Part shown: positions 30,040-43,634 of the stretch, in pieces | Position numbering within the stretch: the stretch's first letter is position 1 | How the letters are laid out: each line of letters starts with the position of its first letter | Virus record (IMG/VR): IMGVR_UViG_3300022602_000024 | Coordinates: 186,001-250,000 of that record | Direction: 5' to 3' (one strand) | Length of the DNA stretch: 64,000 nt | Translations under genes and position numbers: made by a program | The notes under the pieces: generated by a model | What the model saw: the letters and a program-made list of their open reading frames with translations, nothing else | What the model was told of the DNA's origin: nothing | Database searches by the model: none

Positions 30040-30074
30040 AAGTAATGTAACTGTAATATAACAAGATATAAATA
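30040..30074 (+). promoter_or_regulatory. Pho-box-like repeat plus late TATAAATA promoter
   Basis: AAGTAAT-gtaa-CTGTAAT, 11-nt gap, TAAATA. Confidence 0.5.
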
Positions 30075-30098
30075 CTTGTAATTCAACTAAGGTGCCCT

Positions 30099-31148
30099 GT
30101 GTCAAAAATATTATTCATTCTCAAGCGTCGTGAAGATTTCAACGCAACCGTCCATAACCATGTAGGACTAAGTACAGGCCTATATAATAGTGCCAGTTTT
30201 ATGAACAACATGCTCAATGATTTAGATATCGAATCTAAGTTAGTGGTTGTTCCCGACAACAATTCCATAGACCGCGAAGTCACTGCTTTTAAACCGACTC
30301 ATGTTATCATTGAGGCCTTGTGGGTAGTACCTCAGAAGTTTGCTATCTTACAAAAGTTGCATCCTAATGTAAAATGGATTATCCGTATCCACAGTGAAAT
30401 GCCATTCATGGCCGGAGAAGGTATGGCCATGGATTGGTTAGGTGATTACAGTATGTTTAAAAATATAATCATTGGTGTTAATGCACCACGTATGTTGCGT
30501 GAAACAAGATTATATCTACAGCATAAAAATCAATGGGACGATGCTACGACAGAAGAAAAAGTAATTTATATGCCAAATTACTATCCGCAGGATTATGTCA
30601 ATAAACAATTCAGCAAAAACAAGTACTGGATTGATGTCAGTTGTTTTGGTGCAGTTCGTCCACTTAAAAATCATTTAGTCCAAGCATTTGCTGCCATTGA
30701 TTTTGCAAATAAAATAGGCAAACAACTGCGGTTCCACGTCAATGCAGGACGTATTGAAATGCAGGGTGGTCCAGCCTTGGCCAATCTCAAAGGTCTATTC
30801 CAACAAATAAGCGATCACGGGCATCAACTGATCAATCATCAATGGACTCCACGTGAACAATTCTTAGAATTGTGCGCCGAAATGGACATTGGTCTTCAAT
30901 GTAGCTTTAGCGAAACATTCAATATCGTAGGTGCAGATATCATTAGTCAGGGTGTTCCGCTTGTGGGCAGCCGAGAAATACCCTGGGCTATACCAATATT
31001 TTGTGCTGATCCTACTTCTAGCGAAGATATATGCAATAAATTGATGTTGGCATACCGTTGGCCACAAATCAATGTACTATCAAATCAATGGGCATTAACA
31101 CGCTATACCAGTAAAACTGCCAATACATGGCATAAATACTTCAGTTAA
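30099..31148 (+). CDS. GT-B fold glycosyltransferase-like protein
   Basis: FGAVRPLKNH and DIGLQCSFSETFNIVGAD..SQGVPLVGS resemble GT4 C-domain. Confidence 0.6.
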   Translation: MSKILFILKRREDFNATVHNHVGLSTGLYNSASFMNNMLNDLDIESKLVVVPDNNSIDREVTAFKPTHVIIEALWVVPQKFAILQKLHPNVKWIIRIHSEMPFMAGEGMAMDWLGDYSMFKNIIIGVNAPRMLRETRLYLQHKNQWDDATTEEKVIYMPNYYPQDYVNKQFSKNKYWIDVSCFGAVRPLKNHLVQAFAAIDFANKIGKQLRFHVNAGRIEMQGGPALANLKGLFQQISDHGHQLINHQWTPREQFLELCAEMDIGLQCSFSETFNIVGADIISQGVPLVGSREIPWAIPIFCADPTSSEDICNKLMLAYRWPQINVLSNQWALTRYTSKTANTWHKYFS

Positions 31149-31158
31149 GGAAACAACT

Positions 31159-31365
31159 ATGTCAAGAGCTCACAGAGTAAGAACACACCACTGGAGAATG
31201 GGTCGATTAGAAGTTAAAGATCAGATTTTTGAATCCGAAGAGGCTGCGCTAGCGTTTGCTAATAGCGTTGAAGGTGCTGATAGTGTAAAGGTATTCGATC
31301 ATACCAATCAATTATCTCACAACATTGTCGAACAAGGTACTCCAACTGCAGAAAGTTATGCCTAA
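31159..31365 (+). CDS. Small protein, paralog 1 of tandem trio
   Basis: HRV..H.W..G.L....FES.E.A..FA...VKV...L.H...YA. Confidence 0.8.
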   Translation: MSRAHRVRTHHWRMGRLEVKDQIFESEEAALAFANSVEGADSVKVFDHTNQLSHNIVEQGTPTAESYA

Positions 31366-31563
31366 ATGCCTAATTTTCACAAAGTAAAATCTCATCGTTG
31401 GATCGACGGTAAACTAACAACTGTATGGGATTTTTTTGAGTCATTTGAAGATGCAAAGATATTTGCAGAAAATCAAGTAGATTCACACTCAGTGAAGGTT
31501 TACACAGATTCTAACGAATTACTTCATAGTATACAACCCACTATTACTAATACTTACGCATAA
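31366..31563 (+). CDS. Small protein, paralog 2 of tandem trio
   Basis: Same motif, ends NTYA. Confidence 0.8.
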   Translation: MPNFHKVKSHRWIDGKLTTVWDFFESFEDAKIFAENQVDSHSVKVYTDSNELLHSIQPTITNTYA

Positions 31564-31572
31564 GGATTTACC

Positions 31573-31764
31573 ATGGCAGATCATCGAGTTAGACAACATA
31601 CGTGGATTGGCGGAATATTAAAAACCGTAGATCACTTCTTTGAGGAAATCGAAGAAGCCATAGGTTTTGCAAAAAAACAAGATGCACATACTATCAAAGT
31701 ATACGATGCTAATGGACAACTAGTACATCACGAAGACCCTAAGCCCGTGAATACTTACGCTTAA
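31573..31764 (+). CDS. Small protein, paralog 3 of tandem trio
   Basis: Same motif, ends NTYA. Confidence 0.8.
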   Translation: MADHRVRQHTWIGGILKTVDHFFEEIEEAIGFAKKQDAHTIKVYDANGQLVHHEDPKPVNTYA

Positions 31765-31767
31765 TCA

Positions 31768-32481
31768 ATGTTGGCACTAATTTATACACTTGTGGTCACA
31801 CATATTACCATAGTATGTGTGACTTTGTTTTTGCATCGCGGTCAAGCACATCGCGGATTTGAATTTAATCCTGTAGTCGAACACTTTATGCGCTTTTGGT
31901 TATGGCTAACCACGGGCATGATTACTAAGCAATGGGTTGCTATACATCGCAAACATCATCAATACAGTGATTTAGCAAGAGATCCACACAGTCCTGTGGT
32001 ATACGGCCTATGGCGTGTGTTGTTTGGCGGTGCTTTGTTGTATAGTTCGGCAGCCAAAGATGCGGAAATGGTTGCCCAATATGGCGTAGGAACTCCAGAT
32101 GATTGGATTGAGCGTAACTTATATACCCCACATAACTTCACTGGCATAGGAATAATGTTGCTAATAGATATGTCTATATTCGGACCATGGGGATTTGTAG
32201 TATGGGCGGTGCAAATGTTATGGATACCGTTTTGGGCTGCAGGAGTTATCAATGGTCTAGGACACTGGTGGGGTTATCGCAATGGCAATTCTAGAGACAA
32301 TAGTCGCAACTTAGTGCCCTGGGGTATTATAGTTGGTGGAGAAGAACTACATAACAATCATCATTTGAGCCCAGCAAGACCCAAGTTAAGTCTAAAACCT
32401 GGTGAATTTGATATAGGGTGGATGTATATCCGTATACTACAAGCTCTAGGTCTTGTAAAAATCAATAGGCCTCTGCAATAA
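31768..32481 (+). CDS. Membrane fatty-acid desaturase (delta-9 / DesA-like)
   Basis: His boxes LHRGQAH, HRKHH, HNNHH; EFDIGW. Confidence 0.92.
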   Translation: MLALIYTLVVTHITIVCVTLFLHRGQAHRGFEFNPVVEHFMRFWLWLTTGMITKQWVAIHRKHHQYSDLARDPHSPVVYGLWRVLFGGALLYSSAAKDAEMVAQYGVGTPDDWIERNLYTPHNFTGIGIMLLIDMSIFGPWGFVVWAVQMLWIPFWAAGVINGLGHWWGYRNGNSRDNSRNLVPWGIIVGGEELHNNHHLSPARPKLSLKPGEFDIGWMYIRILQALGLVKINRPLQ

Positions 32482-33172
32482 ACTCTGCTTCGGGAATACG
32501 TGTATGCGTATTCTTACTACCAAGCACTACAACAATTCTACGTCCCACATCAGTATCTAACATCATTACAATGCATCCGCCTGATGCGTGTATGTAACCT
32601 GTTTTGCTGACAATAAAATTGTGTCGTTTGCCAATGACAGGGTTAGTATTATATAATATTAGCCAACGACGCTTCATACGAATCTTTACAATGGGACTAG
32701 CAGCCGCATCAACAATGGGTTTATACTTACTGGCTTCGGTTACTAGTTTAACCAACTCGCCGGCAGTACTGACATTAAACACACTGAGACCAGTTGCTTC
32801 GATAAAGTGAGTATGTGTCATACCTAACTGTTGTGCTTTGGCATTCATTGCTGTGACACAAGCAGTTTTACCGCCAGGGTAATAATCGCACAACAACTTT
32901 GCTGAGTTATTATCAGATTTTACCAACGCCATCATTATGCGTTGTTCTCTACTGACTCCTATTAAGTCAGTATGTGGATTTTGATCTGCATCTAACACCA
33001 CCATGACCGTCATTAGTTTACTAATGCTAGCAATAGGACGAACTTCTTCAATATTTTCGCTTTGTAATAACTTACCTTCACCGTCGGCCACTAACCAACT
33101 TGTAGCAGTTATTGTTTTAGCAAAGGTAGGTAATACAACTGTTGTTAACAACACCAATAAAAGTTTTTTCAT
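32462..33172 (-). CDS. pbpG: Peptidase S11 D-alanyl-D-alanine endo/carboxypeptidase (PbpG-like)
   Basis: Signal peptide; SISK (SxxK), SDN, KTG. Confidence 0.88.
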   Translation of the reverse strand: MKKLLLVLLTTVVLPTFAKTITATSWLVADGEGKLLQSENIEEVRPIASISKLMTVMVVLDADQNPHTDLIGVSREQRIMMALVKSDNNSAKLLCDYYPGGKTACVTAMNAKAQQLGMTHTHFIEATGLSVFNVSTAGELVKLVTEASKYKPIVDAAASPIVKIRMKRRWLILYNTNPVIGKRHNFIVSKTGYIHASGGCIVMMLDTDVGRRIVVVLGSKNTHTRIPEAEFIAEAY

Positions 33173-33302
33173 TTGGACTTATTAATGCTCGAAAGGTCGT
33201 TTAAGATAGCGTATGGCATAAAGTACAATTGTAGCATCCACCATTGGTTCAAGTCAAACCATTTGGCTAATAGTTTATCCAATACTGGGGGTACAATATA
33301 CA

Positions 33303-34124
33303 TTATCGTTGTGCCATTTGGAAACGTTTTTCCAAATCTTGTCTGCGATCCAAGTGAACTGCTTTGTTTTTACCAGGGTCAACGGTTTGAGTTGCGGCAG
33401 TTACGTTGTGTTGTCCACGACGTTTTAAATCTGGTTCAACTCTATTTTTCCAAAACCATAAACTTGTGCGTAAGGCTATTTCGGGTTTGGCAACCAAGTC
33501 GGGATTTTGAACTAATCTATCATCACCAAATATGTCTCTAGAGGCTGCAGTATAGTTCCAACGTCCTGTAAGCATAATAAACCCGCGTCCTTTAAAACGT
33601 GGACCGTCTCCGGGCTTTACATTGCCTAAACTTTTGCGTCCTTCATACTGTTTGCCTGAACTGTCTTCAACTAGTTTAGTAAACATAGCCGACTCATGCG
33701 CACATGTAGCTAAGAATGCCATTAGGTATGCACCAGTTATGTGTTCTGCTTCAGCAAACTTCTTTAAGATTGGTTCCAGCGGGGATTTAGTTACAGGAAT
33801 ATACTCGTGTTTAGCAGGTGCAACACCTTTTGCTTGTTGTGATGCAGGATGTGCCGGTGCCTTCGGGTTAGCGGCTTGAACTGTTGTAGTAGCCGCAGTT
33901 GCTAACTTTTCTTTTGCATCATTTAAGAACTGAATGATAATGCCAAGTTTGTCATCCTCTACTGGCGCAAGTGACATGTTATTTTGTTTACTATAATGTG
34001 TAACAAAATCATCCAGTTCGTCAGCTTTGGTGCCTGTAACACCTGCGGCTGCCGCGGCGCCTGCACCAAATTTTCTTAGGACATCGCGTCTAGTATCTTC
34101 GTTTAATATATCATGTAGGAACAT
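33303..34124 (-). CDS. GH19 chitinase-like lysozyme with twin-arginine-like N-terminus
   Basis: AHES, YEGRKSLGN..PGDG..FKGRG..MLTGR.NY; TRRDVLRK. Confidence 0.88.
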   Translation of the reverse strand: MFLHDILNEDTRRDVLRKFGAGAAAAAGVTGTKADELDDFVTHYSKQNNMSLAPVEDDKLGIIIQFLNDAKEKLATAATTTVQAANPKAPAHPASQQAKGVAPAKHEYIPVTKSPLEPILKKFAEAEHITGAYLMAFLATCAHESAMFTKLVEDSSGKQYEGRKSLGNVKPGDGPRFKGRGFIMLTGRWNYTAASRDIFGDDRLVQNPDLVAKPEIALRTSLWFWKNRVEPDLKRRGQHNVTAATQTVDPGKNKAVHLDRRQDLEKRFQMAQR

Positions 34125-34135
34125 GAAGTATTTAG

Positions 34136-34927
34136 TTAAATACCGTCAGGTCTATACTTTGAGTTCTTTGCTATTGCGGCATTCAAAACCGCTAAATTGA
34201 TGTCTAAATCACGTGCAATCTTAGCCAAAGCGGCAGTATCCTTAGGGAAACATGCACCTCCATAGCCTCTACTGCCGTCAGGCCCGGGTACTGCCCAATG
34301 ACTAGTGCCCAAGCGTGGATCTGTTTTGGCCATATCTGCAATAGTGGCCCAATCAATACCTAGAGATTGACACAGATCGTAATATTCATTATTAACTGTT
34401 ACTTTGATTGCTAACTGTGTGTTAGCCAAATACTTGAACATACTGGCTTCGGCTACTGTGCAGTAATCAATTTTTCCGTAAAACTTAACTGAACTTTTGT
34501 CGATCAATACCTTAGTAATATCTGCTCTGAGTCCTTCAGAGCACCCAATGACCACTTTGTGTGGTTCCAAGTAATCGTTGACTGCGTTTACCTGTGTTAA
34601 AAATTCAGGCACATGAGCAAAACGTAATCCGGACTCTTTTTCTAAATGAGTGTATACTGAGGGACTTGCAGTGCTTTTACTGATTACAAGACCTCGATAT
34701 CCAAACAGTTGTTCAACGACTAACTCTAATATGCTGGTATCACAAGCACCGTCTGCACTTTGTGGTGTAGGCACACAGATAAAAATAACATCGCATTTGT
34801 CTTTTAATTCGCTAAGTGGTCTGCTGATGTCCGGATATGCGGGATCATTGATCATTAACTCATCGGGTCTATAACTTGCTGCCACTGCTGAACCTACATA
34901 GCCGCGGCCTATAATGCCTACATTCAT
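34136..34927 (-). CDS. Short UDP-glucose 6-dehydrogenase family protein
   Basis: GRGYVG, PEFL, GYGGACFPKD; lacks C-terminal UDP-binding domain. Confidence 0.85.
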   Translation of the reverse strand: MNVGIIGRGYVGSAVAASYRPDELMINDPAYPDISRPLSELKDKCDVIFICVPTPQSADGACDTSILELVVEQLFGYRGLVISKSTASPSVYTHLEKESGLRFAHVPEFLTQVNAVNDYLEPHKVVIGCSEGLRADITKVLIDKSSVKFYGKIDYCTVAEASMFKYLANTQLAIKVTVNNEYYDLCQSLGIDWATIADMAKTDPRLGTSHWAVPGPDGSRGYGGACFPKDTAALAKIARDLDINLAVLNAAIAKNSKYRPDGI

Positions 34928-34952
34928 TGAAAACTCCTAATTGAACTAATAT

Positions 34953-35180
34953 TTATTTTGCTAAAGTCAGACTGTCTTTAAAAATCTTCCAACAACTTTC
35001 CCAAGACCAACGATGACTGGCTTGTTCTACTTGTGTTCTATCCATCATTATACACTGATCCACTGCGGCACGCAAGCCCACAGATTCCGAAACCATAAAT
35101 CCAGTTATGCCTTGATCTACAACATCCTTGGTTCCTAAGTGTACATCACTAATGAAAATAGTCCTGTAAGTTTTGTTCAT
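34953..35180 (-). pseudogene. In-frame chimera: N-terminus of LpxH/PlcP-like phosphoesterase joined to C-terminus of GT4 glycosyltransferase
   Basis: YRTIFISDVHLGTKD | VVDQGITG...RWSWESCWKIF. Confidence 0.7.
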
Positions 35181-35184
35181 ATTG

Positions 35185-35219
35185 TATTTACGTAGAAGAT
35201 TGTTACAATTGTGTTACAA
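35185..35219 (-). promoter_or_regulatory. Pho-box-like repeat plus TAAATA
   Basis: TTGTAAC-acaa-TTGTAAC, 11-nt gap, TAAATA, 4 nt, ATG. Confidence 0.7.
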
Positions 35220-35221
35220 TC

Positions 35222-35788
35222 TTATTTGTTGGCCAATGGATTGTCGATGGCTTTTTGGATTTTGCTGTCTACATCTCTATTGAGTTTTTCCAATTTGGCA
35301 TCTGTAGTAGATTTTAACTTGTCCATGTCATTGCGCACTTTGTCTAGGTCGTCGCGCACATCTTTGCGCATGGCACGTATCTCTGCGTCTGTTTCACGCA
35401 TGGTTTCTTTTGAACTGCGCTCCACTGTTTCGGTAACTGATTCGTTACGACGTATGTCATTTTTTAAATCGTTTTTGATGTCACGAGTATAGTCATTGGT
35501 CTTGCCCAGAGTTTCTTCAATCACTGCCAGGCGCTTGTCGTAGTCGCTCAAGTCTGGTGCTGAGTAATCAGCAATCTTTTTCTTCATATTCATATAGTCT
35601 TGGTAAACTTGGAAACATCCGTATAGTCCACCAAGTAACGAGCTAGCCAATGTAAATGCCACCATTAGTTTTGCTGGGGTGAATTCATATCCGCCGATGC
35701 TGATAACTGTATCTTTGCTGGCATACTTTTTTACTGCTGCTTCAGCATCATCAATTTTTGCATCAACACTTTTAATTTCTTCTGACAT
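35222..35788 (-). CDS. TM plus coiled-coil hypothetical protein
   Basis: One TM, heptad-rich C-terminus. Confidence 0.75.
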   Translation of the reverse strand: MSEEIKSVDAKIDDAEAAVKKYASKDTVISIGGYEFTPAKLMVAFTLASSLLGGLYGCFQVYQDYMNMKKKIADYSAPDLSDYDKRLAVIEETLGKTNDYTRDIKNDLKNDIRRNESVTETVERSSKETMRETDAEIRAMRKDVRDDLDKVRNDMDKLKSTTDAKLEKLNRDVDSKIQKAIDNPLANK

Positions 35789-35789
35789 A

Positions 35790-37454
35790 TTATTCTCCTA
35801 TTTTGTATTGCATGTCAAGCATTTCTTGGTATAGACGTTCGCTTGCCATTTGTCTTAGTGCTCTTACGTTATCTACTGTTGCTTGATTTGCGTAGACTTC
35901 TTTGGGTGCATAAAAAGCCGCATCTCGTAGTGTGACTGAATATGCTTCAAATCCCTTTGGTTGGGTGGCCATTGCTTCGATAGTAACTGCTCCAGCGGCT
36001 TCGTTTTGCTGAGCATTACGATTTACTGTTTCTGTTTTGGTTTCTTGCAAATTGTTAGACAATTCAAATCTACTGTTCATTGCATCATTTACGGGGTTGC
36101 CGGGTCGGTTTAATCCCAAAGAGCCAACTGAGGCATCTTGTGTAGCAACTTCTGTAAATCTAGTAGCCTGTGTTGGTTGTGAAACAAAGGTTGGTGTTTG
36201 CACAGGAGTTGACTGTTGTGAAGACGTAGTATTAACAGTTATACCTGTTCCAGATGGAGCAAATGGGTTTAATCCAATTGATCCAGTAATACTTTTATTA
36301 GACAAACTGGTTGCGGTTATTGCAGAAGCCGCAGATCCCTGCATGACGCTGACGGCCAGTGCAGATGATTGTTGTGCTTGTGCAGTCGAAGCGGCCAATG
36401 ATGCTTGTGAATTTTGTAGTGCGGCTTTTTGTGTTGCTTGGTCTCTTGCTTCTGCTTGTCTTAGTGCCTTCATTGCAGTTGTAGATGGACCGGCCTTGGT
36501 ACTAGATGATGTGCTGGCAGTTGTTGGGGTAGCGGCTGAAGGTGAAGACGACGCTACTGAATCTTTAACTGTTTGTGGTACACCATCTTGTGCCGAAACT
36601 GTGCCAGTAGAACTTACATTAGCACCACCAGCATTAACTGTTGTCACACTGGTCATTGTGGGATTACTCGATGTTTGGCCAGTCGGCGGAGTCACTGCGG
36701 TTGAACTAGTAGTTACTGTAGTTTGACCAGTTTGACCAACAGTTACATTATTAGATGACGAATTTGTAGTTGTAGGAACGGTTGGTGTTGTAGTACTTGT
36801 GCCAGTTGACGAAGGAGAACTAGTATAGTTCAATGATACATTAACATCACGTACTCTCGGTCCATAGTATCCTGCCCAGAATCGATTATCTTTGCCAGTA
36901 AATGATACATCAAGACTGCTTACAGATGACAAACTATAATTGGTGGTAAAATTTTGCGTACCCGAGAATGTTTGTAAATTGATATTTGTATTGTTATAAT
37001 TGTAACTGTAACTTTCTAATGTCTGCCCATTGGCACCTTGTAGGCTGACATTGCCAGTTAATGTTCCTTGAGTAGCGCCTTCATTATCAATGGTCCAAGA
37101 ATAATTATAGCCGTTGAGTTTAATGCCAGAGCCAGCATTGGCCAACGCTGTGTTAATGCCGATTATTTGCGAAGCGGTACTGTAACCCCAAGAAAATCGA
37201 ATAGTATTAGTATCCTGATTCATTGCAGGTGCAGGACCGCCCCAACAACACTGACTTACTCCAGCAGTATTGGTATATGTTATTCCGTTCCATCCTGTTG
37301 GATTGATCAAATTTCCAGTAGAAGAAACAACACCAGTATTTGGATTTACTGTCTGTACTGTTTGTGCTTTAGAATAATTTAAAAGCAAGGATGCCAAGCA
37401 AAGCGCCAAGGCCAATATTTTTCTTAGTGTCATCAACTTTATCCTTTTCATCAT
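35790..37454 (-). CDS. Secreted S/T/Q-rich protein with N-terminal beta-sandwich (carbohydrate-binding-like) domain
   Basis: Signal-like N-terminus; FWAGYYGPRV; long low-complexity linker. Confidence 0.65.
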   Translation of the reverse strand: MMKRIKLMTLRKILALALCLASLLLNYSKAQTVQTVNPNTGVVSSTGNLINPTGWNGITYTNTAGVSQCCWGGPAPAMNQDTNTIRFSWGYSTASQIIGINTALANAGSGIKLNGYNYSWTIDNEGATQGTLTGNVSLQGANGQTLESYSYNYNNTNINLQTFSGTQNFTTNYSLSSVSSLDVSFTGKDNRFWAGYYGPRVRDVNVSLNYTSSPSSTGTSTTTPTVPTTTNSSSNNVTVGQTGQTTVTTSSTAVTPPTGQTSSNPTMTSVTTVNAGGANVSSTGTVSAQDGVPQTVKDSVASSSPSAATPTTASTSSSTKAGPSTTAMKALRQAEARDQATQKAALQNSQASLAASTAQAQQSSALAVSVMQGSAASAITATSLSNKSITGSIGLNPFAPSGTGITVNTTSSQQSTPVQTPTFVSQPTQATRFTEVATQDASVGSLGLNRPGNPVNDAMNSRFELSNNLQETKTETVNRNAQQNEAAGAVTIEAMATQPKGFEAYSVTLRDAAFYAPKEVYANQATVDNVRALRQMASERLYQEMLDMQYKIGE

Positions 37455-38442
37455 CCTTAGGCATCTTCTCTGGATTGTCTGCCCATGCTGCCTTGGCTTG
37501 TTCGCCTATCTTACCTTCATAAGGGCAAGGTGTTCCGGCCTGTGCCATGGCATCAAACACACGACGGTCCTGGCACATGGTAGCAACAGCAGCCACTTTC
37601 ATTCCCATATCGTAAAGAGTCTTGGACAATTTTAATCGTTCGCAATTCAAATCACGAACTGTACCACCAGTGCTAACACCAAATATTTGTGTTTGAACTG
37701 ATCCACTGGTACCTGTTGTACACAGGTCAGCATTACCACCCGACATCATAGCAGGTGCTATAGCAGTTGGAGGAGGTTGAATAACACGCTGAGTGATATC
37801 ACTTACGTTGTTATTGTTGTTGTTTAATGTTCCACTTTGAATGTTTTGATTGACGTTGTTATTGGTAGCGGTACTAGTGCTGGCATTAACATTGTTATTG
37901 TTGTTGGTCATTGTACCAGTGTTAACATTGTTATTGTTGTAGGTCATTGTACCAGTGTTAACATTGTTGTTATTATTAGTATTGGTACTTGTTGAAGTAG
38001 AGGTAGATGTATTAACATTATTATTATTATTGTTATTGGTCATTGTCCCATACTGATAATTTGTGTTTGTACTGGTAGATGTGTTAACGTTATTATTGTT
38101 GTTTGTTAGTGTACCACTTTGAACGTTATTGTTGGTGTAGGTAACTGACCCGCTCAATACATTATTGTTGGTCACTGTTCCACTTTGAACGTTGTTGTTG
38201 GTATTAACATTGGTAGTACCGCCACTAAGAGCGGTATTGTTATTGTTGGTAACTGTGCCACTGTTGACATTGTTTGAATTGATTGTACTAACGCTATTGC
38301 TAGTACTGTTGGTATCAACCAAACTAGATGAACTGTAGCCACCCAAAGCAGTGCTTTGGTTTATTATCGTAGGTGATGTTTGTGCAGTCGCAGACAAGGC
38401 GATCAACGCAGACATACCAATCATTATTATTTTTCTTATCAT
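37369..38442 (-). CDS. Secreted Asn/Thr-repeat protein with Cys-rich C-terminal domain
   Basis: NNNVNTGTMT-type repeats; CERLKLSKTLYDMGMKVAAV..MCQD. Confidence 0.75.
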   Translation of the reverse strand: MIRKIIMIGMSALIALSATAQTSPTIINQSTALGGYSSSSLVDTNSTSNSVSTINSNNVNSGTVTNNNNTALSGGTTNVNTNNNVQSGTVTNNNVLSGSVTYTNNNVQSGTLTNNNNNVNTSTSTNTNYQYGTMTNNNNNNNVNTSTSTSTSTNTNNNNNVNTGTMTYNNNNVNTGTMTNNNNNVNASTSTATNNNVNQNIQSGTLNNNNNNVSDITQRVIQPPPTAIAPAMMSGGNADLCTTGTSGSVQTQIFGVSTGGTVRDLNCERLKLSKTLYDMGMKVAAVATMCQDRRVFDAMAQAGTPCPYEGKIGEQAKAAWADNPEKMPKDDEKDKVDDTKKNIGLGALLGILAFKLF

Positions 38443-38508
38443 TTGATTGCTCCATAAGGTAAGTCTTACCTAAATATTTATAAAGCAATCTACTGAACTT
38501 AAGTGCTA

Positions 38509-38763
38509 CTACTTAGTTTTCGTGGGATGGAATGAGTTTATTTGCCTTTGACTGTCTCTAACGTTAAGAATACATGTGGTTTTTAGTTCCAAGTTGTTGA
38601 TTTTTTCGCACTCAGTGGCGCTCAAAGTGACTCTCGCAATGCATAAATGATGTTGATTTGTTTCGTGTATTTGATTGCACTGATCTATGTCGCCAGCAAA
38701 TGCAGAGGGAAATAGCAATAAAATTACAAGGATGTAATACATACAGTATTTACATACAACCAA
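38509..38763 (-). CDS. Small secreted Cys-containing protein
   Basis: Signal peptide, four Cys. Confidence 0.5.
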   Translation of the reverse strand: MVVCKYCMYYILVILLLFPSAFAGDIDQCNQIHETNQHHLCIARVTLSATECEKINNLELKTTCILNVRDSQRQINSFHPTKTK

Positions 38764-38766
38764 AAT

Positions 38767-38788
38767 AAAAGGCTCCGAAGAGCCTTTT
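38767..38788. terminator. Intrinsic terminator
   Basis: AAAAGGCTC-cgaa-GAGCCTTTT. Confidence 0.85.
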
Positions 38789-38805
38789 GGTTAAGTTAAC
38801 GAAAC

Positions 38806-39723
38806 TTATGCCGGAATGTAATCGATTCCTGTTCCAGCTAATACACCAGTTGTTGCAGGAGAAACACCAACCAATCCAATGGTTTGTTGGAATGCTGTAA
38901 TGTGTGCAGCTGCTGCCAACATAGCACCTTCAGTAGTAGCACCAGTGGCCAACTGTGTTACATAAGGCAAGGCCTGTGCAGGAGTAGGAGCAGTTCCGAC
39001 TACGTTGGTGTAAACAAAGTTAACAAAACTTGCATAGTCTGAACCACCTGCGGCTGTTGCAAATACACTAGAGCTGGCAATGGCTTGACCAACTTGTGCG
39101 CTGGTTTGTCCGGCGTCTTCCATTTTGATACCAAGACCTTCGTATGTGGTGTTGACTGTGCCGCCCAAGCCGGCTTTGAGTAATGCATACACGTCGCCAG
39201 CAGTTCCGCTGACATCAAATGCAGTTGCTTTGTCTGTGAATGTAATACGCTCGTGATTTTCTAATTTGAAACTCACTGTTGTATCTAATGCAGATGTTAC
39301 TAAAATAGCCTTGTTGGTTGTATCATTAACCACTGTGTAGTCTGCACTCTTATCATTAAGCACATAGTTGTCAATACCGTTAGTACCAGTTACATCAATG
39401 ATGGTGTCAATGATGCCATTGCCAATAGCGCCAGTACCAGATGTAGCAAAGCCAGTGATTTTACCACCTGTACCAATGCCGGTAACGATTACCACGTCAT
39501 TGTTAGTGGGAGCTGCGCCACCAAGGGCAGTACCAGCAATAGTTACTGTATCACCAAGAGCATATCCTGTGCCCGAGTTAGTAGATTCAACTGCGGTTGT
39601 ATATACGCCATTGGTTTTTGTTACGTCAAACTTAGCACCGGTACCCGAGCCACTGGTTGTGCCCGTTACTGCGTTATAAGTTGCGTTGATTGGGACTACC
39701 CCGATTGTTACTGTTGTTGTCAT
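38806..39723 (-). CDS. G/T/A-rich surface-type protein with DUF4214-like C-terminus
   Basis: ERITFTDKATAFD and FVNFVYTNVVGTAP resemble S-layer/RTX-associated DUF4214 proteins. Confidence 0.55.
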   Translation of the reverse strand: MTTTVTIGVVPINATYNAVTGTTSGSGTGAKFDVTKTNGVYTTAVESTNSGTGYALGDTVTIAGTALGGAAPTNNDVVIVTGIGTGGKITGFATSGTGAIGNGIIDTIIDVTGTNGIDNYVLNDKSADYTVVNDTTNKAILVTSALDTTVSFKLENHERITFTDKATAFDVSGTAGDVYALLKAGLGGTVNTTYEGLGIKMEDAGQTSAQVGQAIASSSVFATAAGGSDYASFVNFVYTNVVGTAPTPAQALPYVTQLATGATTEGAMLAAAAHITAFQQTIGLVGVSPATTGVLAGTGIDYIPA

Positions 39724-39797
39724 TTATTTTCCTTTGAATTCAATAAAGTAATAGTATATAGTATTTCTACTAGTAGGTCAAATATTTTGTTAGCCAT

Positions 39798-39818
39798 AAA
39801 AAAGAGCCTTTCGGCTCT
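39798..39818 (-). terminator. pstS terminator
   Basis: AGAGCC-gaaa-GGCTCT-TTTTT. Confidence 0.85.
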
Positions 39819-39869
39819 CAGTGTTGGTTACGAGTTCCAACATCCACTCTATCGTTGTGGCCGGTTATT

Positions 39870-40844
39870 TTACTTAGCGTTCCATTCTGCACGGATTTTA
39901 TTTTTAACTCGGTCAGGTAAAACCAAATAATCTAAATCAGTTGCTGACTTATCGCCCTTGGTAAATGCCCAATCAAAGAATTTAGTCACTGCAGGTGTAC
40001 GGTCTAATCCTTTGTAAACAACAACAAATGTAGCACTGGTAATGGGCCAACCATCCAGGTTGTTTAAATCAACCGCAAATCCGGGAACGTCCCAGTTTGC
40101 TGATTTGGCCGAGACTGCAAATGTGGTATCATCGGGTTGAACAACTTGTCCTTTGCGATTTTTCATCACAACATAATTCATCTTGGCCTGCTTAACATAA
40201 GCATACTCTACATATCCAATGGCTCCAGGGAATTGTTGCACGTATGCAGCAACTCCAGGATTGCCTTTACCTGCCACAATACCTTCTTTACCAAAGATAA
40301 CTGTTTTACCTGTGCCCACATTCTTTTTAAATTCTTCGTTGACTTTGCTCAAGAAGTCTGTGAATACTGCGGTAGTGCCCGATGCATCACTGCGTACGAT
40401 CAGTGTGATTGCTTGATCTGGCAATGCTAACCCAGGATTTAGTTTAGCAATGGCTGCATCATTCCAGTTTAAAATTTTACGTTGGAAAATGTCTGCCAAA
40501 GTTCGTCCGTCTAGCACTAACTTGCCGGGTTCAACACCTTTGAGATTGATTACCGGAACAACACCGCCTACCGCAGTTGGAAATTGATAATAACCTTTTG
40601 CACGAATTTCATCTGTAGTAACAGGATCATCTGTGCCGGCAAAGTCCACGGTCTTTGCTTCGATTTGCTTCATACCAGCACCTGATCCCACTGGTTGATA
40701 GTTGATAGCAATACCAGTTTCCTTATTGTATTCTGCTGCCCACTTTGAATATAATGGACCTGCAAAACTGGAACCTGCCCCAGTTACTTGTGCTTGACTG
40801 ACCATAGCCACTGTGGCTAATAAAATTGCTAAGAGTTTGTTCAT
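39870..40844 (-). CDS. pstS: Phosphate ABC transporter substrate-binding protein PstS
   Basis: GAGSSF, YQPVGSGAG, DFAGTD, RSDASGTT, GAIGYVE, WPITSAT. Confidence 0.96.
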   Translation of the reverse strand: MNKLLAILLATVAMVSQAQVTGAGSSFAGPLYSKWAAEYNKETGIAINYQPVGSGAGMKQIEAKTVDFAGTDDPVTTDEIRAKGYYQFPTAVGGVVPVINLKGVEPGKLVLDGRTLADIFQRKILNWNDAAIAKLNPGLALPDQAITLIVRSDASGTTAVFTDFLSKVNEEFKKNVGTGKTVIFGKEGIVAGKGNPGVAAYVQQFPGAIGYVEYAYVKQAKMNYVVMKNRKGQVVQPDDTTFAVSAKSANWDVPGFAVDLNNLDGWPITSATFVVVYKGLDRTPAVTKFFDWAFTKGDKSATDLDYLVLPDRVKNKIRAEWNAK

Positions 40845-40868
40845 TGATTTTCCTTTGTGTTATATTAC

Positions 40869-40914
40869 TATTTAAACACAAATATGTTACAGTTTTATTA
40901 CAAACTCATTACAA
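40869..40914 (-). promoter_or_regulatory. Triple Pho box plus TAAATA upstream of pstS
   Basis: TTGTAAT-gagt-TTGTAAT-aaaa-CTGTAAC (11-bp period), 11-nt gap, TAAATA. Confidence 0.85.
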
Positions 40915-41612: not shown

Positions 41613-41912
41613 TTAGTCTATCTTCTTTGCTATTTCTTCGTAGAAAGAGTCTAGTTCCCCGCCAAATTTGCCCGTTAATATAGGCATTAAATCTCGACAC
41701 AGTTGATAGTTTTTGGCATTGTAAGCATTTATAAACTCTTGGTGCAGATTCTTGTAACTTTCCAATGTAGACATTTCCATCACAATCTTTTCTGCTGGCA
41801 GTACACAATACACCGGAGTAGGCTCGCCATTGACGTCAAAAGTTTCAAGCTCTAACAAGGTATGCTTGCTCTTTAGCAAATGAATTGCAGTTGGTTCCCA
41901 AACTATTTGCAT
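41613..41912 (-). CDS. Hypothetical protein
   Basis: ORF coupled to exonuclease. Confidence 0.65.
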   Translation of the reverse strand: MQIVWEPTAIHLLKSKHTLLELETFDVNGEPTPVYCVLPAEKIVMEMSTLESYKNLHQEFINAYNAKNYQLCRDLMPILTGKFGGELDSFYEEIAKKID

Positions 41913-42445
41913 TAACGTTCCTTTGATATTTTTAATCTATGATATATTTCCTGCACACCTTGTGCTTGGCTAATACAATCTTCTAAGGCATTGTGTAGGC
42001 CGGCTTTGTTTTTTTCTCTAGGATCGCCATGTACTCCAAACAAGGTACGACTATCACGTATTTGCCAAAACTGCCAAGGTGTAGGCCAGCCCATTTGTCT
42101 ATAGATGTTTTCTAGTATCACAATATCAAATGCAGGGCCTTGGCACCAAATATTATTTACGCCAACTAAGAATCTATTCAGTTGTTGATACATGTCGGTT
42201 AGGCTGATGCGTCCGGTTTCGCCTAATGCTTCTTCACGAACATCTTCAGCTTGTCTCCCCCACCATTCAAGAGTATCTTCTTGTACCTCACGGCCCAGTT
42301 CTAACTGTTCGTTAACATCAATTCGGAAATACAATCCGTCTCCGAACCGGTCAACTTCAAAAGGATCAAACTTGACTGCGCCTAGTGTGAGTATGGCACA
42401 GTCAGGGCGGGTTCCTAACGATTCTAAATCAATCATACAATCCAT
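41912..42445 (-). CDS. DEDDh 3'-5' exoribonuclease (Rv2179c-like)
   Basis: MIDLESLG, WCQGPAFD, HNALEDC. Confidence 0.88.
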   Translation of the reverse strand: MDCMIDLESLGTRPDCAILTLGAVKFDPFEVDRFGDGLYFRIDVNEQLELGREVQEDTLEWWGRQAEDVREEALGETGRISLTDMYQQLNRFLVGVNNIWCQGPAFDIVILENIYRQMGWPTPWQFWQIRDSRTLFGVHGDPREKNKAGLHNALEDCISQAQGVQEIYHRLKISKER

Positions 42446-42465
42446 GCTTGTATTATACTAGGTTT

Positions 42466-42945
42466 TTACTTAGTTGTCAAGATTTTGTGGCTTTCTGCTT
42501 CAGCCACACGTCGACGCAAATTGGTACTGGAGAAACTGTGATCTCGTCCATTGTGTACAATTTCGATACCACGTGCCCAGCAGGCTTCATCACCGGTAAA
42601 TCGTTTGCCTTCGTACTCAACACCCAATACACGTACATCAATTGGTAATGTAAGTAAGATGTCTACTAGGTCTTGCTCCGTGCTATATACCACAACTTCA
42701 TCTACGTATCTGCAGCCTGCCAATTGTATTTGACGTTCCACAATGCTTTGGATAGGTTTGTTTTTGGTATCGGGGCGATCAATTGTGGGATCTGTTTGCA
42801 AGCCAGCAATTAAATAATCGCAATGATTTTTGGCATCCGATAACATGGCCACGTGTCCAGCATGTAAAAGATCAAACGAACTAAAAACTATACCAATTCG
42901 TTTTCCATCGGCTTTGAGTTTTTTAAAATTATTAAATATGTTCAT
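42466..42945 (-). CDS. Cytidylyltransferase (TagD/RfaE-like)
   Basis: FDLLHAGH (HxGH), YVDEV, SSTNLR. Confidence 0.9.
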   Translation of the reverse strand: MNIFNNFKKLKADGKRIGIVFSSFDLLHAGHVAMLSDAKNHCDYLIAGLQTDPTIDRPDTKNKPIQSIVERQIQLAGCRYVDEVVVYSTEQDLVDILLTLPIDVRVLGVEYEGKRFTGDEACWARGIEIVHNGRDHSFSSTNLRRRVAEAESHKILTTK

Positions 42946-43634
42946 ATGTATTTTATGGTAATAATATTACGATGTATTTTGTCGTAAAAAGTTGCTCTAT
43001 GTTTTATCCCTAATGCTATCATAGCATCTTTTATTGAGGGATATTCTATATTGTTTATTATAACTGGTTTATATTTTTTTATCAATGGTTTTCCAACTCT
43101 TTTGGCCATTGCTTCACCATGAGATTTTTTCCAGGCTGGATTATTTGCTCTATCAAATTCAATATTGCTTTTACGTATTTTTTCGATAGTTTCAGCAGTT
43201 TGGGTTAAACCTTCATGTCCATTTGATTTTCCTTTTTTAGAATTTTGTATTTTTTGATTACGGAGTGTTTTCTGTTCGGTAGTTAAAGAAGAATGCCACT
43301 GCTTTATTCCAGCAGACCTTTTTTTCGTTATCAATTCTTTATTGGGATGATTACTTGTAGTATCACCACCAGTGCCACCATCTGTTATATTATATAAATT
43401 TTCTACTAACTTACTTTTTTTAATGTATTCTATTTCGAGCATGTCAAGTTCTTTTTTTGACTCTGCCCAACAAAGTATTTCAATTTTAAAATTTTCTTTA
43501 CCGTATTTTTTTATGGCATCATTTAATATAACACCAGATCCATAATATGTTGGGCAAAAATTTGCTGATTTTTTCTGCCCAACATAAGATCTTTGATTGA
43601 TTAAATTTGTCGTCTTGTAAATGTATCCGTACAT
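42942..43634 (-). mobile_element. Free-standing GIY-YIG (Seg-like) homing endonuclease
   Basis: GYIYKTTNLIN..YVGQK, YYGSG, YNITDGG. Confidence 0.88.

What the first reader, a model, noticed from the sequence alone, without database searches (positions are those of the whole stretch)
30040..40914. Pho boxes placed exactly 11 nt upstream of phage late-type TAAATA at three loci
Three loci share one geometry. pstS: three heptamers with 11-bp period (40914-40886), gap 40885-40875, TAAATA at 40874. plcP/agt remnant: TTGTAAC-N4-TTGTAAC (35219-35202), gap 35201-35191, TAAATA at 35190. GT/trio/desaturase operon: AAGTAAT-N4-CTGTAAT (30040-30057), gap 30058-30068, TAAATA at 30069. Established: PhoB binds CTGTCAT-like 11-bp-period repeats and activates sigma70 promoters, and phage pstS genes with Pho boxes are known. 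Here, at least at pstS and the plcP remnant, the downstream element matches the T4-type late motif rather than TAnnnT. Hypothesis: host PhoB co-activates the phage late sigma factor, giving a phosphate-sensing late regulon.
Basis: partly seen in the sequence, partly recalled or inferred. Interest (0 to 1): 0.75.

Follow-up and report, generated by a model that had tools for sequence, protein, structure and literature searches.

The report
Phosphate-sensing boxes fused to phage late promoters
In an uncultured 354-kb T4-like lake phage and hundreds of its relatives, binding sites for the host's phosphate-starvation regulator PhoB sit at one fixed distance from the core of the phage's own late promoter, so a host nutrient sensor may control genes read by a viral sigma factor.

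Summary
All three loci are exactly as described. In this genome, YTGTAAY heptamer pairs with an 11-bp period occur 6 times, against about 0.4 at other periods. TAAATA with a good box upstream occurs only at a gap of 11.

Across IMG/VR, box-N11-TAAATA gives 89 of 118 unique sites; every other gap from 6 to 16 gives 1-6. Of 65 phage pstS promoters chosen by protein alone, 53 have phased heptamers ending at N11, N22 or N32 from an invariant TAAATA. Bacterial pstS promoters instead have box-N10-TAnnnT.

TAAATA is the core of this phage's own late-type motif, ATAAATA, which is 9.6-fold enriched upstream of genes. A gp55 late-sigma homologue is present. The genes served are pstS, a PlcP-like phosphoesterase made as leaderless mRNA, small RNAs, and a 349-aa/desaturase operon.

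There is a caveat. N11+TAAATA equals N10+TTAAAT, and bacterial phoB promoters use T[GTC]NAAT at N10; three have the identical arrangement. Both readings predict the same start site.

The best reading is a composite, PhoB-controlled promoter readable by sigma70 and by the late sigma. Direct co-activation of the late sigma by PhoB remains possible but untested. No RNA data were available.

The parts
40886..40914 (-). Three Pho-box heptamers (TTGTAAT, TTGTAAT, CTGTAAC) with an 11-bp period, upstream of pstS
   Evidence: The phased arrays are conserved in 53 of 65 phage pstS promoters.
40875..40881 (-). Degenerate fourth heptamer TTGTGTT, in phase, abutting TAAATA. It fills the '11-nt gap' as N4 + 7.
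   Evidence: gap-0 alignment. The same ..TTGTGTT-TAAATA recurs in many relatives.
40869..40874 (-). TAAATA core (TTAAATA with the preceding T), 24 nt before the pstS ATG. It can be read as a late-type core (-11..-6) and/or as a sigma70 hexamer TTAAAT (-12..-7).
   Evidence: PMC2988020.
39870..40844 (-). pstS, periplasmic phosphate-binding protein (324 aa)
   Evidence: NCBIfam NF008171, E = 9e-109, above the cut-off. Pfam PBP_like_2.
39797..39864 (-). Conserved structured RNA element directly 3' of pstS (two hairpins) plus an intrinsic terminator. It is part of the Pho-controlled transcript.
   Evidence: compensatory changes in stem 2; terminator at 39819-39802. No Rfam family.
35202..35219 (-). 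Perfect Pho box TTGTAAC-ACAA-TTGTAAC
35185..35190 (-). TAAATA core (GTAAATA), only 4 nt before the ATG: a leaderless-type arrangement
   Evidence: PlcP genes in relatives sit 4-8 nt (mode 5) after TAAATA.
34953..35180 (-). 75-aa ORF whose first ~19 residues (MNKTYRTIFISDVHLGTKD) are the N-terminus of the PlcP-like LpxH-family metallophosphoesterase. The rest is unrelated, so this is a gene remnant.
   Evidence: The intact 264-294-aa homologues in relatives match Metallophos / LpxH-like families.
34136..34927 (-). Fragment of a UDP-glucose 6-dehydrogenase family gene (covers profile positions 74-295 of 413), with its own ATAAATA site at about 34956
30040..30057 (+). Weak distal heptamer (AAGTAAT) plus consensus proximal heptamer (CTGTAAT)
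   Evidence: 2 mismatches. The same half-strength box at N11 occurs in about 10 of 37 relatives; phased heptamers lie at N21-23 and N31-33 in others.
30067..30074 (+). Full late-type consensus TATAAATA (ATAAATA plus T), 24 nt before the GTG start
30099..32481 (+). Operon: a 349-aa protein of unknown family (no Pfam, NCBIfam or PDB hit), three small ORFs (68, 65 and 63 aa), and a DesA-family fatty-acid desaturase (237 aa, covering profile positions 11-241 of 385)
   Evidence: Calling the 349-aa protein a glycosyltransferase is not supported by any tool result.

Best explanation
These are host-PhoB-controlled promoters of a phosphate-stress regulon. The carrier is an uncultured freshwater 354-kb T4-like phage, and the same arrangement runs through a large family of ~350-kb relatives.

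Anatomy. Arrays of PhoB heptamers (YTGTMAY, 11-bp phase) end exactly 11 bp upstream of an invariant TAAATA. TAAATA is the core of the phage's own late-type promoter, ATAAATA. In T4 numbering it lies at -11..-6. The proximal PhoB dimer therefore sits at -40..-23, the place it occupies at bacterial Pho promoters.

Two readings of one element. The same heptamer-long stretch (T)TAAATA also spells TTAAAT at -12..-7. That is a bacterial phoB-type sigma70 hexamer, and it predicts the same start site.

Most likely mechanism (inferred, not shown). The element is a composite promoter. In phosphate-starved cells PhoB~P recruits sigma70 RNA polymerase early. The gp55-type late sigma then uses the same core and the same +1 later. 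Expression of pstS (with its 3' RNA), the PlcP-like gene (as leaderless mRNA) and the 349-aa/desaturase operon is thus phosphate-responsive and carries on into the late phase.

Shown versus inferred. The sequence anatomy, its conservation and its specificity to phages are shown. PhoB binding, the sigma factor used, the start site and the timing are inferred.
For: 1. Pho-box identity.
- 11-bp phasing: period 11 occurs 6 times against 0.4 at other periods.
- Heptamer ends occupy only N0, N10, N11, N21, N22 and N32 in 53 phage pstS promoters.
- Downstream genes are PstS (33) and PlcP-like (34), with single cases of a Na/Pi-cotransporter fragment and other proteins.
- No Trans_reg_C domain is encoded in the phage, while the control genomes were positive.

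2. TAAATA is a late-type core.
- ATAAATA has 55 of its 87 genomic copies within 100 nt upstream of genes, a 9.6-fold enrichment.
- It precedes structural genes, such as a 940-aa minor-head-like gene; GTAAATA precedes a 1935-aa fibre-like gene and the head-gene operon.
- A gp55 homologue is present (phrog_12791, E = 2e-81), as is Gp23.
- The phage's sigma70-type promoters are canonical TTGAC-N17-TATAAT and never pair with TAAATA.

3. The constraint is specific to phages.
- 53 phage pstS promoters have TAAATA. The exceptions are TAAGTA in L259 and L274 (L259 is the same record as L005) and TAAATT in L006-L008.
- 32 of 37 bacterial pstS promoters have box-N10-TAnnnT, with many different hexamers.
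- In the phages the first base is free and the last A is invariant. In bacterial phoB promoters the opposite holds.

4. Late core with and without boxes. The locus-1 gene family keeps ATAAATA (A at -12 in 24 of 37) whether or not the N11 heptamer is present.

5. Same start-site rule. The distance from TAAATA to a leaderless ATG is 4-8 nt (mode 5) for Pho-type plcP. It is the same for 11 box-less ATAAATA genes in this genome.

6. Sigma70 readability. T[GTC]NAAT lies at N10 in 15 of 21 bacterial phoB promoters, and three have the identical box-N11-TAAATA.

7. Tandem variants. L256, L258, L220 and L253 carry box-N10-TATTAT/TACAAT followed by TAAATA at N21. Both element types are kept even when they do not overlap.

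8. Register. The T4 TATA box spans -13..-6 (PMC2988020).
Against: - There are no transcript data: no RNA run was listed. The start site, the sigma factor and phosphate dependence are all unmeasured.
- TTAAAT lacks the -11 A that sigma70 normally needs.
- In 22 of 53 pstS promoters and most plcP promoters the first base is C, G or A. That makes a poor sigma70 hexamer and argues that sigma70 is not the main reader there.
- pstS promoters never have A before TAAATA (0 of 53). They therefore depart from the phage's own late consensus at one position.
- The N21 class mostly lacks any sigma70-like hexamer at N10. A pure sigma70/PhoB mechanism does not explain that.
- The host is unknown, so its PhoB and its own promoters could not be examined.
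Confidence: 0.45

Rival explanations
1. PhoB~P directly activates RNA polymerase carrying the phage late sigma (the gp55 homologue) at sub-consensus late promoters. Sigma70 plays no role. The result is a phosphate-gated late regulon.
For: - TAAATA is invariant, including its last A, while the sigma70 '-12' base is free.
- pstS promoters never carry the late-optimal A at -12 (0 of 53). The phage's general TAAATA sites carry it about 51% of the time. That is the classic signature of an activator-dependent weakened promoter.
- Locus-1 relatives combine the full ATAAATA with phased boxes, where ATAAAT would be a poor sigma70 hexamer.
- A second spacing class at N21/22 exists without a sigma70-like hexamer at N10.
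- In T4 numbering the box sits at exactly the canonical PhoB position.
- The gp55 homologue in this family carries a conserved extra N-terminal region of ~175 aa with unknown function. It could offer a new contact surface.
- No gp33 was detectable, so the beta-flap may be free (with a positive control).
Against: - PhoB is known to act through sigma70 region 4, which gp55 lacks (established knowledge; background in PMC7892883).
- No precedent was found in the literature searched.
- In T4 the sliding clamp and gp33 occupy the upstream DNA where PhoB would sit.
- Identical box-N11-TAAATA promoters work in bacteria that have no gp55.
- The N-terminal extension could not be modelled (pLDDT 51). It shows no similarity to gp33 or to anything in the Atlas.
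Confidence: 0.3
2. These are ordinary PhoB/sigma70 promoters copied from, or converged on, a bacterial type (box-N10-TTAAAT). The resemblance to the late motif has no function, and the late sigma does not use these sites.
For: - Bacterial phoB promoters carry T[GTC]NAAT at N10, and three carry exactly box-N11-TAAATA.
- T is the commonest base before TAAATA at pstS (31 of 53), as expected for a sigma70 -12 T.
- Cyanophage pstS is known to be under host PhoBR control (Zeng & Chisholm 2012, as cited in PMC10976474).
Against: - It does not explain why about 56 diverged phage promoters fix TAAATA, including the base after the hexamer, while bacteria vary those positions and fix the first T instead.
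- It does not explain why TAAATA is kept at N21 when a canonical TATTAT or TACAAT already sits at N10.
- It does not explain why the same gene family uses ATAAATA without a proximal box.
- It does not explain why G, C or A precede TAAATA in most plcP promoters.
Confidence: 0.17
3. The heptamer repeats are bound by a phage-encoded regulator, not by host PhoB. This would be a MotA-like activator of a phage-specific promoter class.
For: The architecture is confined to one phage family. Many of the phage's ORFs have no known function.
Against: - The core and the 11-bp phase match proteobacterial Pho boxes, including TGTCAY variants.
- The regulon consists of classic Pho-regulon functions.
- No PhoB-type winged-helix domain and no MotA (with a positive control) was found in the genome.
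Confidence: 0.05

Closest known systems
Proteobacterial PhoB-dependent (class II) promoters, e.g. E. coli pstS, phoA and phoB
   Same: - Direct 7-bp repeats related to CTGTCAT, with 4-bp spacers and 11-bp phasing.
- Arrays of 2-4 units that replace the -35 element.
- The last unit lies a fixed distance from the -10.
- They serve pstS and other phosphate-stress genes.
   Different: - The -10-position element is an invariant TAAATA, one base further from the box than the bacterial hexamer.
- Bacterial pstS promoters use varied TAnnnT hexamers, and phoB promoters use T[GTC]NAAT.
- Only 1 of 21 sampled bacterial phoB promoters, and none of 37 pstS promoters, has TAAATA.
T4-type late promoters (TATAAATA read by gp55, with gp33 and the gp45 clamp)
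   Same: - The core TAAATA is identical.
- The phage's own enriched motif is ATAAATA.
- A gp55 homologue is present.
- The short distance to the start is compatible with -11..-6.
   Different: - T4 late promoters have no conserved upstream element (PMC2988020, PMC7892883). Here a phased activator array sits at -40..-23.
- The pstS and plcP sites lack the phage's preferred A at -12.
- gp33 and gp45 were not detectable with T4-based queries.
- The gp55 homologue is 291 aa, against 185 aa in T4.
PhoB-regulated genes of T4-like cyanophages (P-SSM2 pstS/phoA; S-PM2d, Rihtman et al. 2024, PMC10976474)
   Same: A T4-like phage places host PhoB sites in front of phosphate-related auxiliary genes, so that expression follows the host's phosphate status.
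   Different: - The cyanobacterial boxes are 8-bp PyTTAAPyPy(T/A) repeats at variable positions (-25 to -138 in S-PM2d).
- No fixed register to a late-type core is described there.
- Here the boxes are of the proteobacterial type and are locked at N11 (or N21/22) from TAAATA.
T4 middle promoters (a MotA box at -30 plus a sigma70 -10, with AsiA)
   Same: An activator box replaces the -35 element at a fixed distance from the -10 element in a T4-like phage.
   Different: The box sequence differs. No MotA or AsiA was found. The binding protein is most likely a host regulator, not a phage one.

Membership tests
Pho box (PhoB binding site) | Two or more 7-bp direct repeats related to CTGTCAT, separated by 4 bp (11-bp period) | tested here: met
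   (period 11: 6 against 0.4); phased at N0, N11, N22 and N32 only.
Pho box (PhoB binding site) | Replaces the -35 element; the last repeat lies ~10 bp upstream of the -10 hexamer, so the repeats span about -40..-23 | tested here: met
   N11 to TAAATA equals N10 to TTAAAT. With either register the repeats fall at -40..-34 and -29..-23. The start site itself is inferred, not mapped.
Pho box (PhoB binding site) | Lies upstream of phosphate-starvation genes | tested here: met
   PstS, PlcP-like LpxH-family phosphoesterase, Na/Pi-cotransporter fragment.
Pho box (PhoB binding site) | Bound by phosphorylated PhoB; expression induced by phosphate limitation | not testable with these tools
   The host is unknown and no RNA runs were listed. 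Complex prediction did not fold the DNA complex.
T4-type late promoter | A TATAAATA-like element at -13..-6 | tested here: inconclusive
   The core TAAATA is present at all three loci. Full TATAAATA is present only at locus 1. The pstS site is TTTAAATA and the plcP site is CGTAAATA. The phage's own preferred A at -12 is absent there, and absent in 0 of 53 related pstS promoters.
T4-type late promoter | No conserved sequence at the -35 position; activation comes from the sliding clamp through gp33 | tested here: not met
   A conserved phased heptamer array occupies -40..-23. gp33 was not found, with a positive T4 control. gp45 was not found with T4-based queries, without a positive control for the Pfam model.
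T4-type late promoter | The genome encodes a gp55-type late sigma | tested here: met
   G000 30520-31395 (minus strand), 291 aa. phrog_12791 E = 2e-81, phrog_234 E = 9e-25, T4 gp55 E = 6e-6.
T4-type late promoter | Transcribed late, dependent on gp55, from a start ~6 nt after the element | not testable with these tools
   Indirect evidence only. The distance to a leaderless ATG is 4-8 nt (mode 5), the same as for box-less ATAAATA genes.
Sigma70 PhoB-dependent promoter | A sigma70 -10 hexamer (TAnnnT, with A at -11 and T at -7) 10 bp after the box | tested here: inconclusive
   The hexamers at N10 are TTAAAT, GTAAAT and ATAAAT: no A at -11. However, 15 of 21 bacterial phoB promoters also have a non-A second base (T[GTC]NAAT), and three are identical to the phage arrangement.

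The most novel reading that the evidence does not exclude
A host two-component response regulator (PhoB~P) directly activates RNA polymerase carrying a phage-encoded T4-type late sigma. It would do so by sitting at -40..-23 of sub-consensus TAAATA promoters. This would make a nutrient-gated late regulon in an abundant family of ~350-kb freshwater phages. The contact might run through the conserved ~175-aa N-terminal extension of their gp55 homologue, in place of the gp33/clamp route.
Probability: 0.3. Interest if true: 0.85.

Novelty: new variant of a known kind. Interest (0 to 1): 0.64.

Why it matters
T4-type late promoters are textbook examples of promoters with no upstream element. They are switched on only by the replication clamp. 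Here a host nutrient sensor's sites are locked in register to that same core, in hundreds of diverged promoters from an abundant, uncultured family of lake phages.

If the late sigma reads these sites under PhoB control, it would be the first case of a cellular response regulator steering a viral sigma factor. It would also show how giant phages tune phosphate uptake (pstS) and phospholipid salvage (PlcP-like) to the host's nutrient state while they build a 354-kb genome.

The more modest reading is a promoter readable by both sigma70 and the late sigma from one start site. Even that is a compact regulatory design not described before. It gives a sequence rule, box-N11-TAAATA, for finding phosphate-responsive viral genes and small RNAs in metagenomes.

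Tried and rejected
- **RNA evidence.** Two run searches listed DNA runs from freshwater lakes but no RNA run. Start sites could not be mapped and read laying was not used.
- **Complex prediction** (2 PhoB + promoter DNA + gp55 homologue) was not folded by the tool. It is not evidence either way.
- **Structure of the gp55 homologue.** The AlphaFold model was poor (mean pLDDT 51.5), so no fold search was run. The Atlas search of the N-terminal 178 aa gave nothing above chance. hhalign against T4 gp33 found no similarity.
- **Cultured relatives.** A distant DNA search found nothing. The tblastn search with PstS found only cyanophages, plus records that are really E. coli or Salmonella DNA. The 'Campylobacter phage A11a' hit is the E. 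coli pstS locus. No cultured model was found.
- **'TAAATA is incompatible with sigma70 because N11 differs from N10.'** I held this view until and then rejected it. The two registers are the same DNA, and bacterial phoB promoters use similar hexamers.
- **'TAAATA is merely the next unit of the heptamer array.'** Rejected. The downstream 'unit' is heptamer-like only at this pstS site, not at plcP or in L002.
- **A sigma70-like TACAAT overlapping TAAATA at the plcP remnant**. Rejected as functional: it lies 15 nt from the box and would start inside the ORF.
- **Rfam.** No family matched the RNA-like leaders.
- **The 349-aa protein as a glycosyltransferase.** No Pfam, NCBIfam, PHROG or PDB support.
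- **Unpublished genome.** Locus L616 (genome G090) was left out of every count.

Full report
**What the window is.** The window is bases 186001-250000 of a single 354,429-bp IMG/VR virus record. CheckV rates it 98% complete, and its GC content is 40%. It encodes a T4-type major capsid protein (Pfam Gp23, E = 7e-99). It also encodes a homologue of the T4 late sigma gp55 at genome position 30520-31395 on the minus strand. This homologue matches phrog_12791 'sigma factor for late transcription' at E = 2e-81 and T4 gp55 at E = 6e-6. DNA runs that hold the region are freshwater and lake metagenomes. No cultured relative was found.

**Checking the observation.**
- At pstS, three heptamers (TTGTAAT, TTGTAAT, CTGTAAC) with an 11-bp period are followed by 11 nt and then TAAATA. 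The ATG lies 24 nt further on.
- At the plcP remnant, TTGTAAC-N4-TTGTAAC is followed by 11 nt, TAAATA, 4 nt and the ATG.
- At locus 1, AAGTAAT-N4-CTGTAAT is followed by 11 nt and TAAATA. This TAAATA is part of a full TATAAATA, 24 nt before a GTG start.
- The '11-nt gap' at pstS is itself N4 plus a degenerate in-phase heptamer, TTGTGTT.

**Chance.**
- In the whole genome, YTGTAAY pairs occur 6 times at period 11. The mean for the other periods from 5 to 40 is 0.4.
- Of 329 TAAATA sites, a box with 2 or fewer mismatches is centred on gap 11, at exactly these three loci. The other hits are two further alignments within the pstS array itself (gaps 0 and 22) and one 1-mismatch box at gap 16, not upstream of a gene.
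- I scanned IMG/VR for the box followed by a free gap of 6-16 nt and then TAAATA. It gave 118 unique sites: 89 at gap 11 and 1-6 at each other gap.
- The TGTCAY form of the box gave 36 unique sites at gap 11. It also gave 22 at gap 9, which are a few clonal groups from other phages.
- A scan of gaps 17-28 showed a secondary peak at 21 and 22 (29 and 13 sites, against 3-10 elsewhere), mostly in front of plcP.

**Samples not biased by the motif.** I picked phage pstS genes by protein similarity alone, giving 65 unique upstream regions.
- 53 of them have TAAATA with phased heptamers.
- Heptamers end only at N0, N10, N11, N21, N22 and N32 from TAAATA; 42 promoters have one at N11.
- The base before TAAATA is T in 31, C in 10, G in 12 and A in none. 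The gaps printed are one too high because of a counting slip in my script.
- The only departures from TAAATA are TAAGTA (L259, which is the same record as L005, and L274) and TAAATT (L006-L008).

I picked relatives of the 349-aa locus-1 protein in the same way, giving 37 unique regions with TAAATA.
- Heptamer cores end only at N11 (10), N21-23 (19) and N31-33 (10).
- The base before TAAATA is A in 24.

So the weak box at locus 1 is genuine. The same late-type core serves this gene both with and without a proximal box.

**What TAAATA is in this phage.**
- ATAAATA is the most enriched heptamer in the 100 nt upstream of my rough gene calls: 55 of 87 copies, a 9.6-fold enrichment, with 61% of copies intergenic against 8% of the genome.
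- It, or GTAAATA, precedes structural genes.
- The sites fall into two classes: about 20-25 nt before a start codon with a Shine-Dalgarno sequence, and 4-8 nt before an ATG with none (11 sites).
- The phage's sigma70-type promoters are a separate, canonical class: TTGAC-N16-18-TATAAT (20 sites) or TATACT (8 sites), with T at position 6 in 48 of 53. TAAATA is never paired with TTGAC upstream of a gene.

TAAATA is therefore the core of a T4-type late promoter class, not the phage's ordinary sigma70 -10.

**What the boxes control.** The 98 N11 sites retrieved from IMG/VR lie before these genes:
- a PlcP-like, LpxH-family metallophosphoesterase (34 sites), with 4-8 nt (mode 5) between TAAATA and the ATG and no Shine-Dalgarno sequence, which implies a leaderless mRNA;
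- PstS (33 or more sites);
- a Na/Pi-cotransporter fragment;
- a phage outer-membrane-protein-like gene;
- a few proteins of unknown function;
- two terminator-ended small RNA-like units.

This is a Pho regulon. The phage encodes no PhoB-type winged-helix domain (positive controls) and no MotA. The binder is therefore most likely host PhoB.

PstS is closest to PstS of Burkholderiales, at about 50-53% identity. That is only a weak hint about the host.

The larger contigs carrying the architecture hold the same long gp55. Their completeness estimates imply genomes of about 350 kb. The gp55 homologue has at least 8000 close relatives in public data.

**Comparison with bacteria.** In 37 bacterial pstS promoters from the closest PstS relatives, the box is followed by exactly 10 nt and a varied TAnnnT hexamer (TAGAGT, TACAGT, TAAATT and others) in 32. 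The four enterobacterial exceptions have a second box further downstream. The E. coli pstS promoter, recovered by accident, shows box-N10-TATTTT. None of the 37 has TAAATA.

Taken alone, this suggested that the phage element is not a sigma70 hexamer. A wider look changed that view.
- In 401 genomes of the same GTDB class, box-N(8-14)-TAAATA occurs 8 times. Three of these are at N11, and all three lie directly upstream of phoB.
- Among 21 bacterial phoB promoters with a good box, the hexamer at N10 is TGTAAT (5), TTTAAT (5), TGCAAT, TCTAAT, TTGAAT, TGAAAT or similar. That is T[GTC]NAAT with a non-A second base in 15 of 21. The following base varies (the unpublished genome G090 was left out).

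Box-N11-TAAATA is the same DNA as box-N10-TTAAAT, which fits this bacterial class. Sigma70 with PhoB could therefore read the phage promoters.

**Register.** The T4 late TATA box spans -13..-6 (PMC2988020), so TAAATA lies at -11..-6. A sigma70 hexamer lies at -12..-7 (established knowledge). The two readings of (T)TAAATA therefore predict the same +1. Both put the proximal PhoB dimer at -40..-34 and -29..-23, its canonical place. But it does not discriminate between the two sigma factors.

**What does discriminate, in part.**
- The pattern of constraint differs. Bacteria fix the first T and the AAT, and leave the second and third positions and the following base free. The phages free the first base and fix TAAATA, including the base after the sigma70 hexamer. 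That is the footprint of a second reader needing TAAATA.
- In L256, L258, L220 and L253 a canonical TATTAT or TACAAT sits at N10, yet TAAATA is still kept, at N21. TAAATA therefore has a role of its own.
- The locus-1 family uses ATAAATA with or without a proximal box.
- The distance from TAAATA to a leaderless ATG is the same for Pho-type plcP and for box-less late-type genes.

These points argue that the late sigma uses these sites. In favour of sigma70 also using them are the bacterial precedents and the preference for T before TAAATA at pstS.

In favour of direct PhoB action on the late enzyme:
- total avoidance of the late-optimal A at pstS (0 of 53), as in activator-dependent promoters;
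- the many plcP promoters with G, C or A in the sigma70 '-12' position;
- phased boxes on consensus ATAAATA promoters at locus 1;
- the N21/22 class, which has no sigma70-like hexamer at N10.

Against it:
- PhoB is known to act through sigma70 region 4, which gp55 lacks;
- in T4, gp33 and the clamp occupy the upstream DNA (PMC7892883);
- no publication linking PhoB to gp55-type promoters was found.

Known cyanophage cases (P-SSM2; S-PM2d, PMC10976474) use cyanobacterial boxes at variable positions, with no fixed register to a late core.

**Verdict.** I rate the possibilities as follows:
- a composite promoter, PhoB-controlled and readable by both sigma70 and the late sigma from one start site: about 0.45;
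- direct PhoB co-activation of the late sigma: about 0.3;
- a sigma70-only promoter: about 0.17;
- a phage-encoded binder: about 0.05.

Nothing here was measured. PhoB binding, start sites, timing and sigma dependence are all inferred. The decisive experiments are in vitro transcription with the two holoenzymes, with and without PhoB~P, and 5'-end mapping.

**Side observations.** The pstS transcript ends in a conserved two-hairpin RNA plus terminator (window 39864-39797, minus strand). In relatives the same RNA sometimes has its own box-TAAATA promoter. Stem 2 shows compensatory changes, and no Rfam family matches. The plcP gene in this genome is a remnant: 19 N-terminal residues fused to unrelated sequence, followed by a fragment of a UDP-glucose dehydrogenase gene. 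The gp55 homologue carries a conserved N-terminal extension of about 175 aa with unknown fold.

Noticed in passing
window 39797-39864 (- strand); also L263:1999-2083, L158:640-724(-), L157:2435-2519, L128, L394, L244: A conserved ~45-nt two-hairpin RNA plus intrinsic terminator lies directly 3' of pstS. In some relatives it has its own Pho box-N11(10)-TAAATA promoter instead. Stem 2 shows compensatory changes (GCTGG/CCAGC, GTTGG/CCAAC, ACCGG/CCGGT). No Rfam family matches. It is a candidate phosphate-regulated phage small RNA or 3'UTR element.
   Followed up: partly
L114, L168, L186, L100, L134 (IMG/VR loci): A second small RNA-like unit of about 70 nt runs from a Pho box-N11-TAAATA promoter to its own terminator, and often sits just upstream of plcP. 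No Rfam match.
   Followed up: no
G000:C1:30520-31395 (- strand; outside the window): The late-sigma (gp55) homologue is 291 aa. Only residues ~180-280 match the usual gp55 profile, and a ~175-aa N-terminal extension is highly conserved. At least 8000 homologues were found; the 120 listed are 79-99% identical. The C-terminus (…GPVYEE) does not look like the T4 clamp-binding tail. The fold could not be predicted.
   Followed up: partly
G000 genome, 11 sites (e.g. window 15533, - strand, before the 310-aa deoxyribonucleotidase-like gene at 14587-15519): ATAAATA sits only 4-8 nt before an ATG with no Shine-Dalgarno sequence. This suggests a class of leaderless late mRNAs in a T4-like phage.
   Followed up: partly
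G000:C1:7510 (- strand), G000:C1:18591 (- strand), G000:C1:159875 (+ strand): Three further perfect YTGTAAY-N4-YTGTAAY boxes lie at or inside gene ends. One lies 34 nt upstream of a GTAAATA that precedes a 1935-aa fibre-like gene. One lies 59 nt upstream of the GTAAATA of the head-gene operon. One is inside a gene with no start nearby. Whether they function is unknown.
   Followed up: partly
window 34136-35180 (- strand): This is a decayed lipid-remodelling locus. Only the promoter and 19 codons of the PlcP-like gene survive. They are followed by a UDP-glucose 6-dehydrogenase fragment truncated at both ends, which has its own ATAAATA site.
   Followed up: partly
window 31768-32481 (+ strand): The DesA-family desaturase ORF covers only profile positions 11-241 of 385 (NCBIfam NF049918, just over the cut-off). 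It is possibly truncated.
   Followed up: no
L611-L640 (bacterial phoB loci): Bacterial phoB promoters in this class mostly carry T[GTC]NAAT (TGTAAT, TTTAAT), with no A at the second position, exactly 10 nt after the Pho box. pstS promoters of related bacteria carry TAnnnT. This is a systematic difference in the -10 between two Pho-regulon genes.
   Followed up: partly
L485 (MG065691.1, 'UNVERIFIED Campylobacter phage A11a', 29636-31389): This stretch of the public record is the E. coli pstS promoter and gene. It is probably contaminating host or laboratory DNA in the deposited phage record.
   Followed up: partly
G000 genome: TGTAA pairs at a period of 18 occur 12 times, against 1-4 at most other periods. 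This unexplained second periodicity is possibly another repeat family.
   Followed up: no
window 41912-43634 (- strand): An exonuclease-like ORF matches only the C-terminal half of its PHROG profile. It lies next to a homing-endonuclease-like ORF and a nucleotidyltransferase-like ORF. It may be a gene split by a mobile endonuclease.
   Followed up: no
L486, L502, L511 and others: In unrelated viral contigs, TGTCAT-N4-TTGTCAT is followed at gap 9 by TAAATA in a few clonal groups. This is a different, unexplored arrangement.
   Followed up: no
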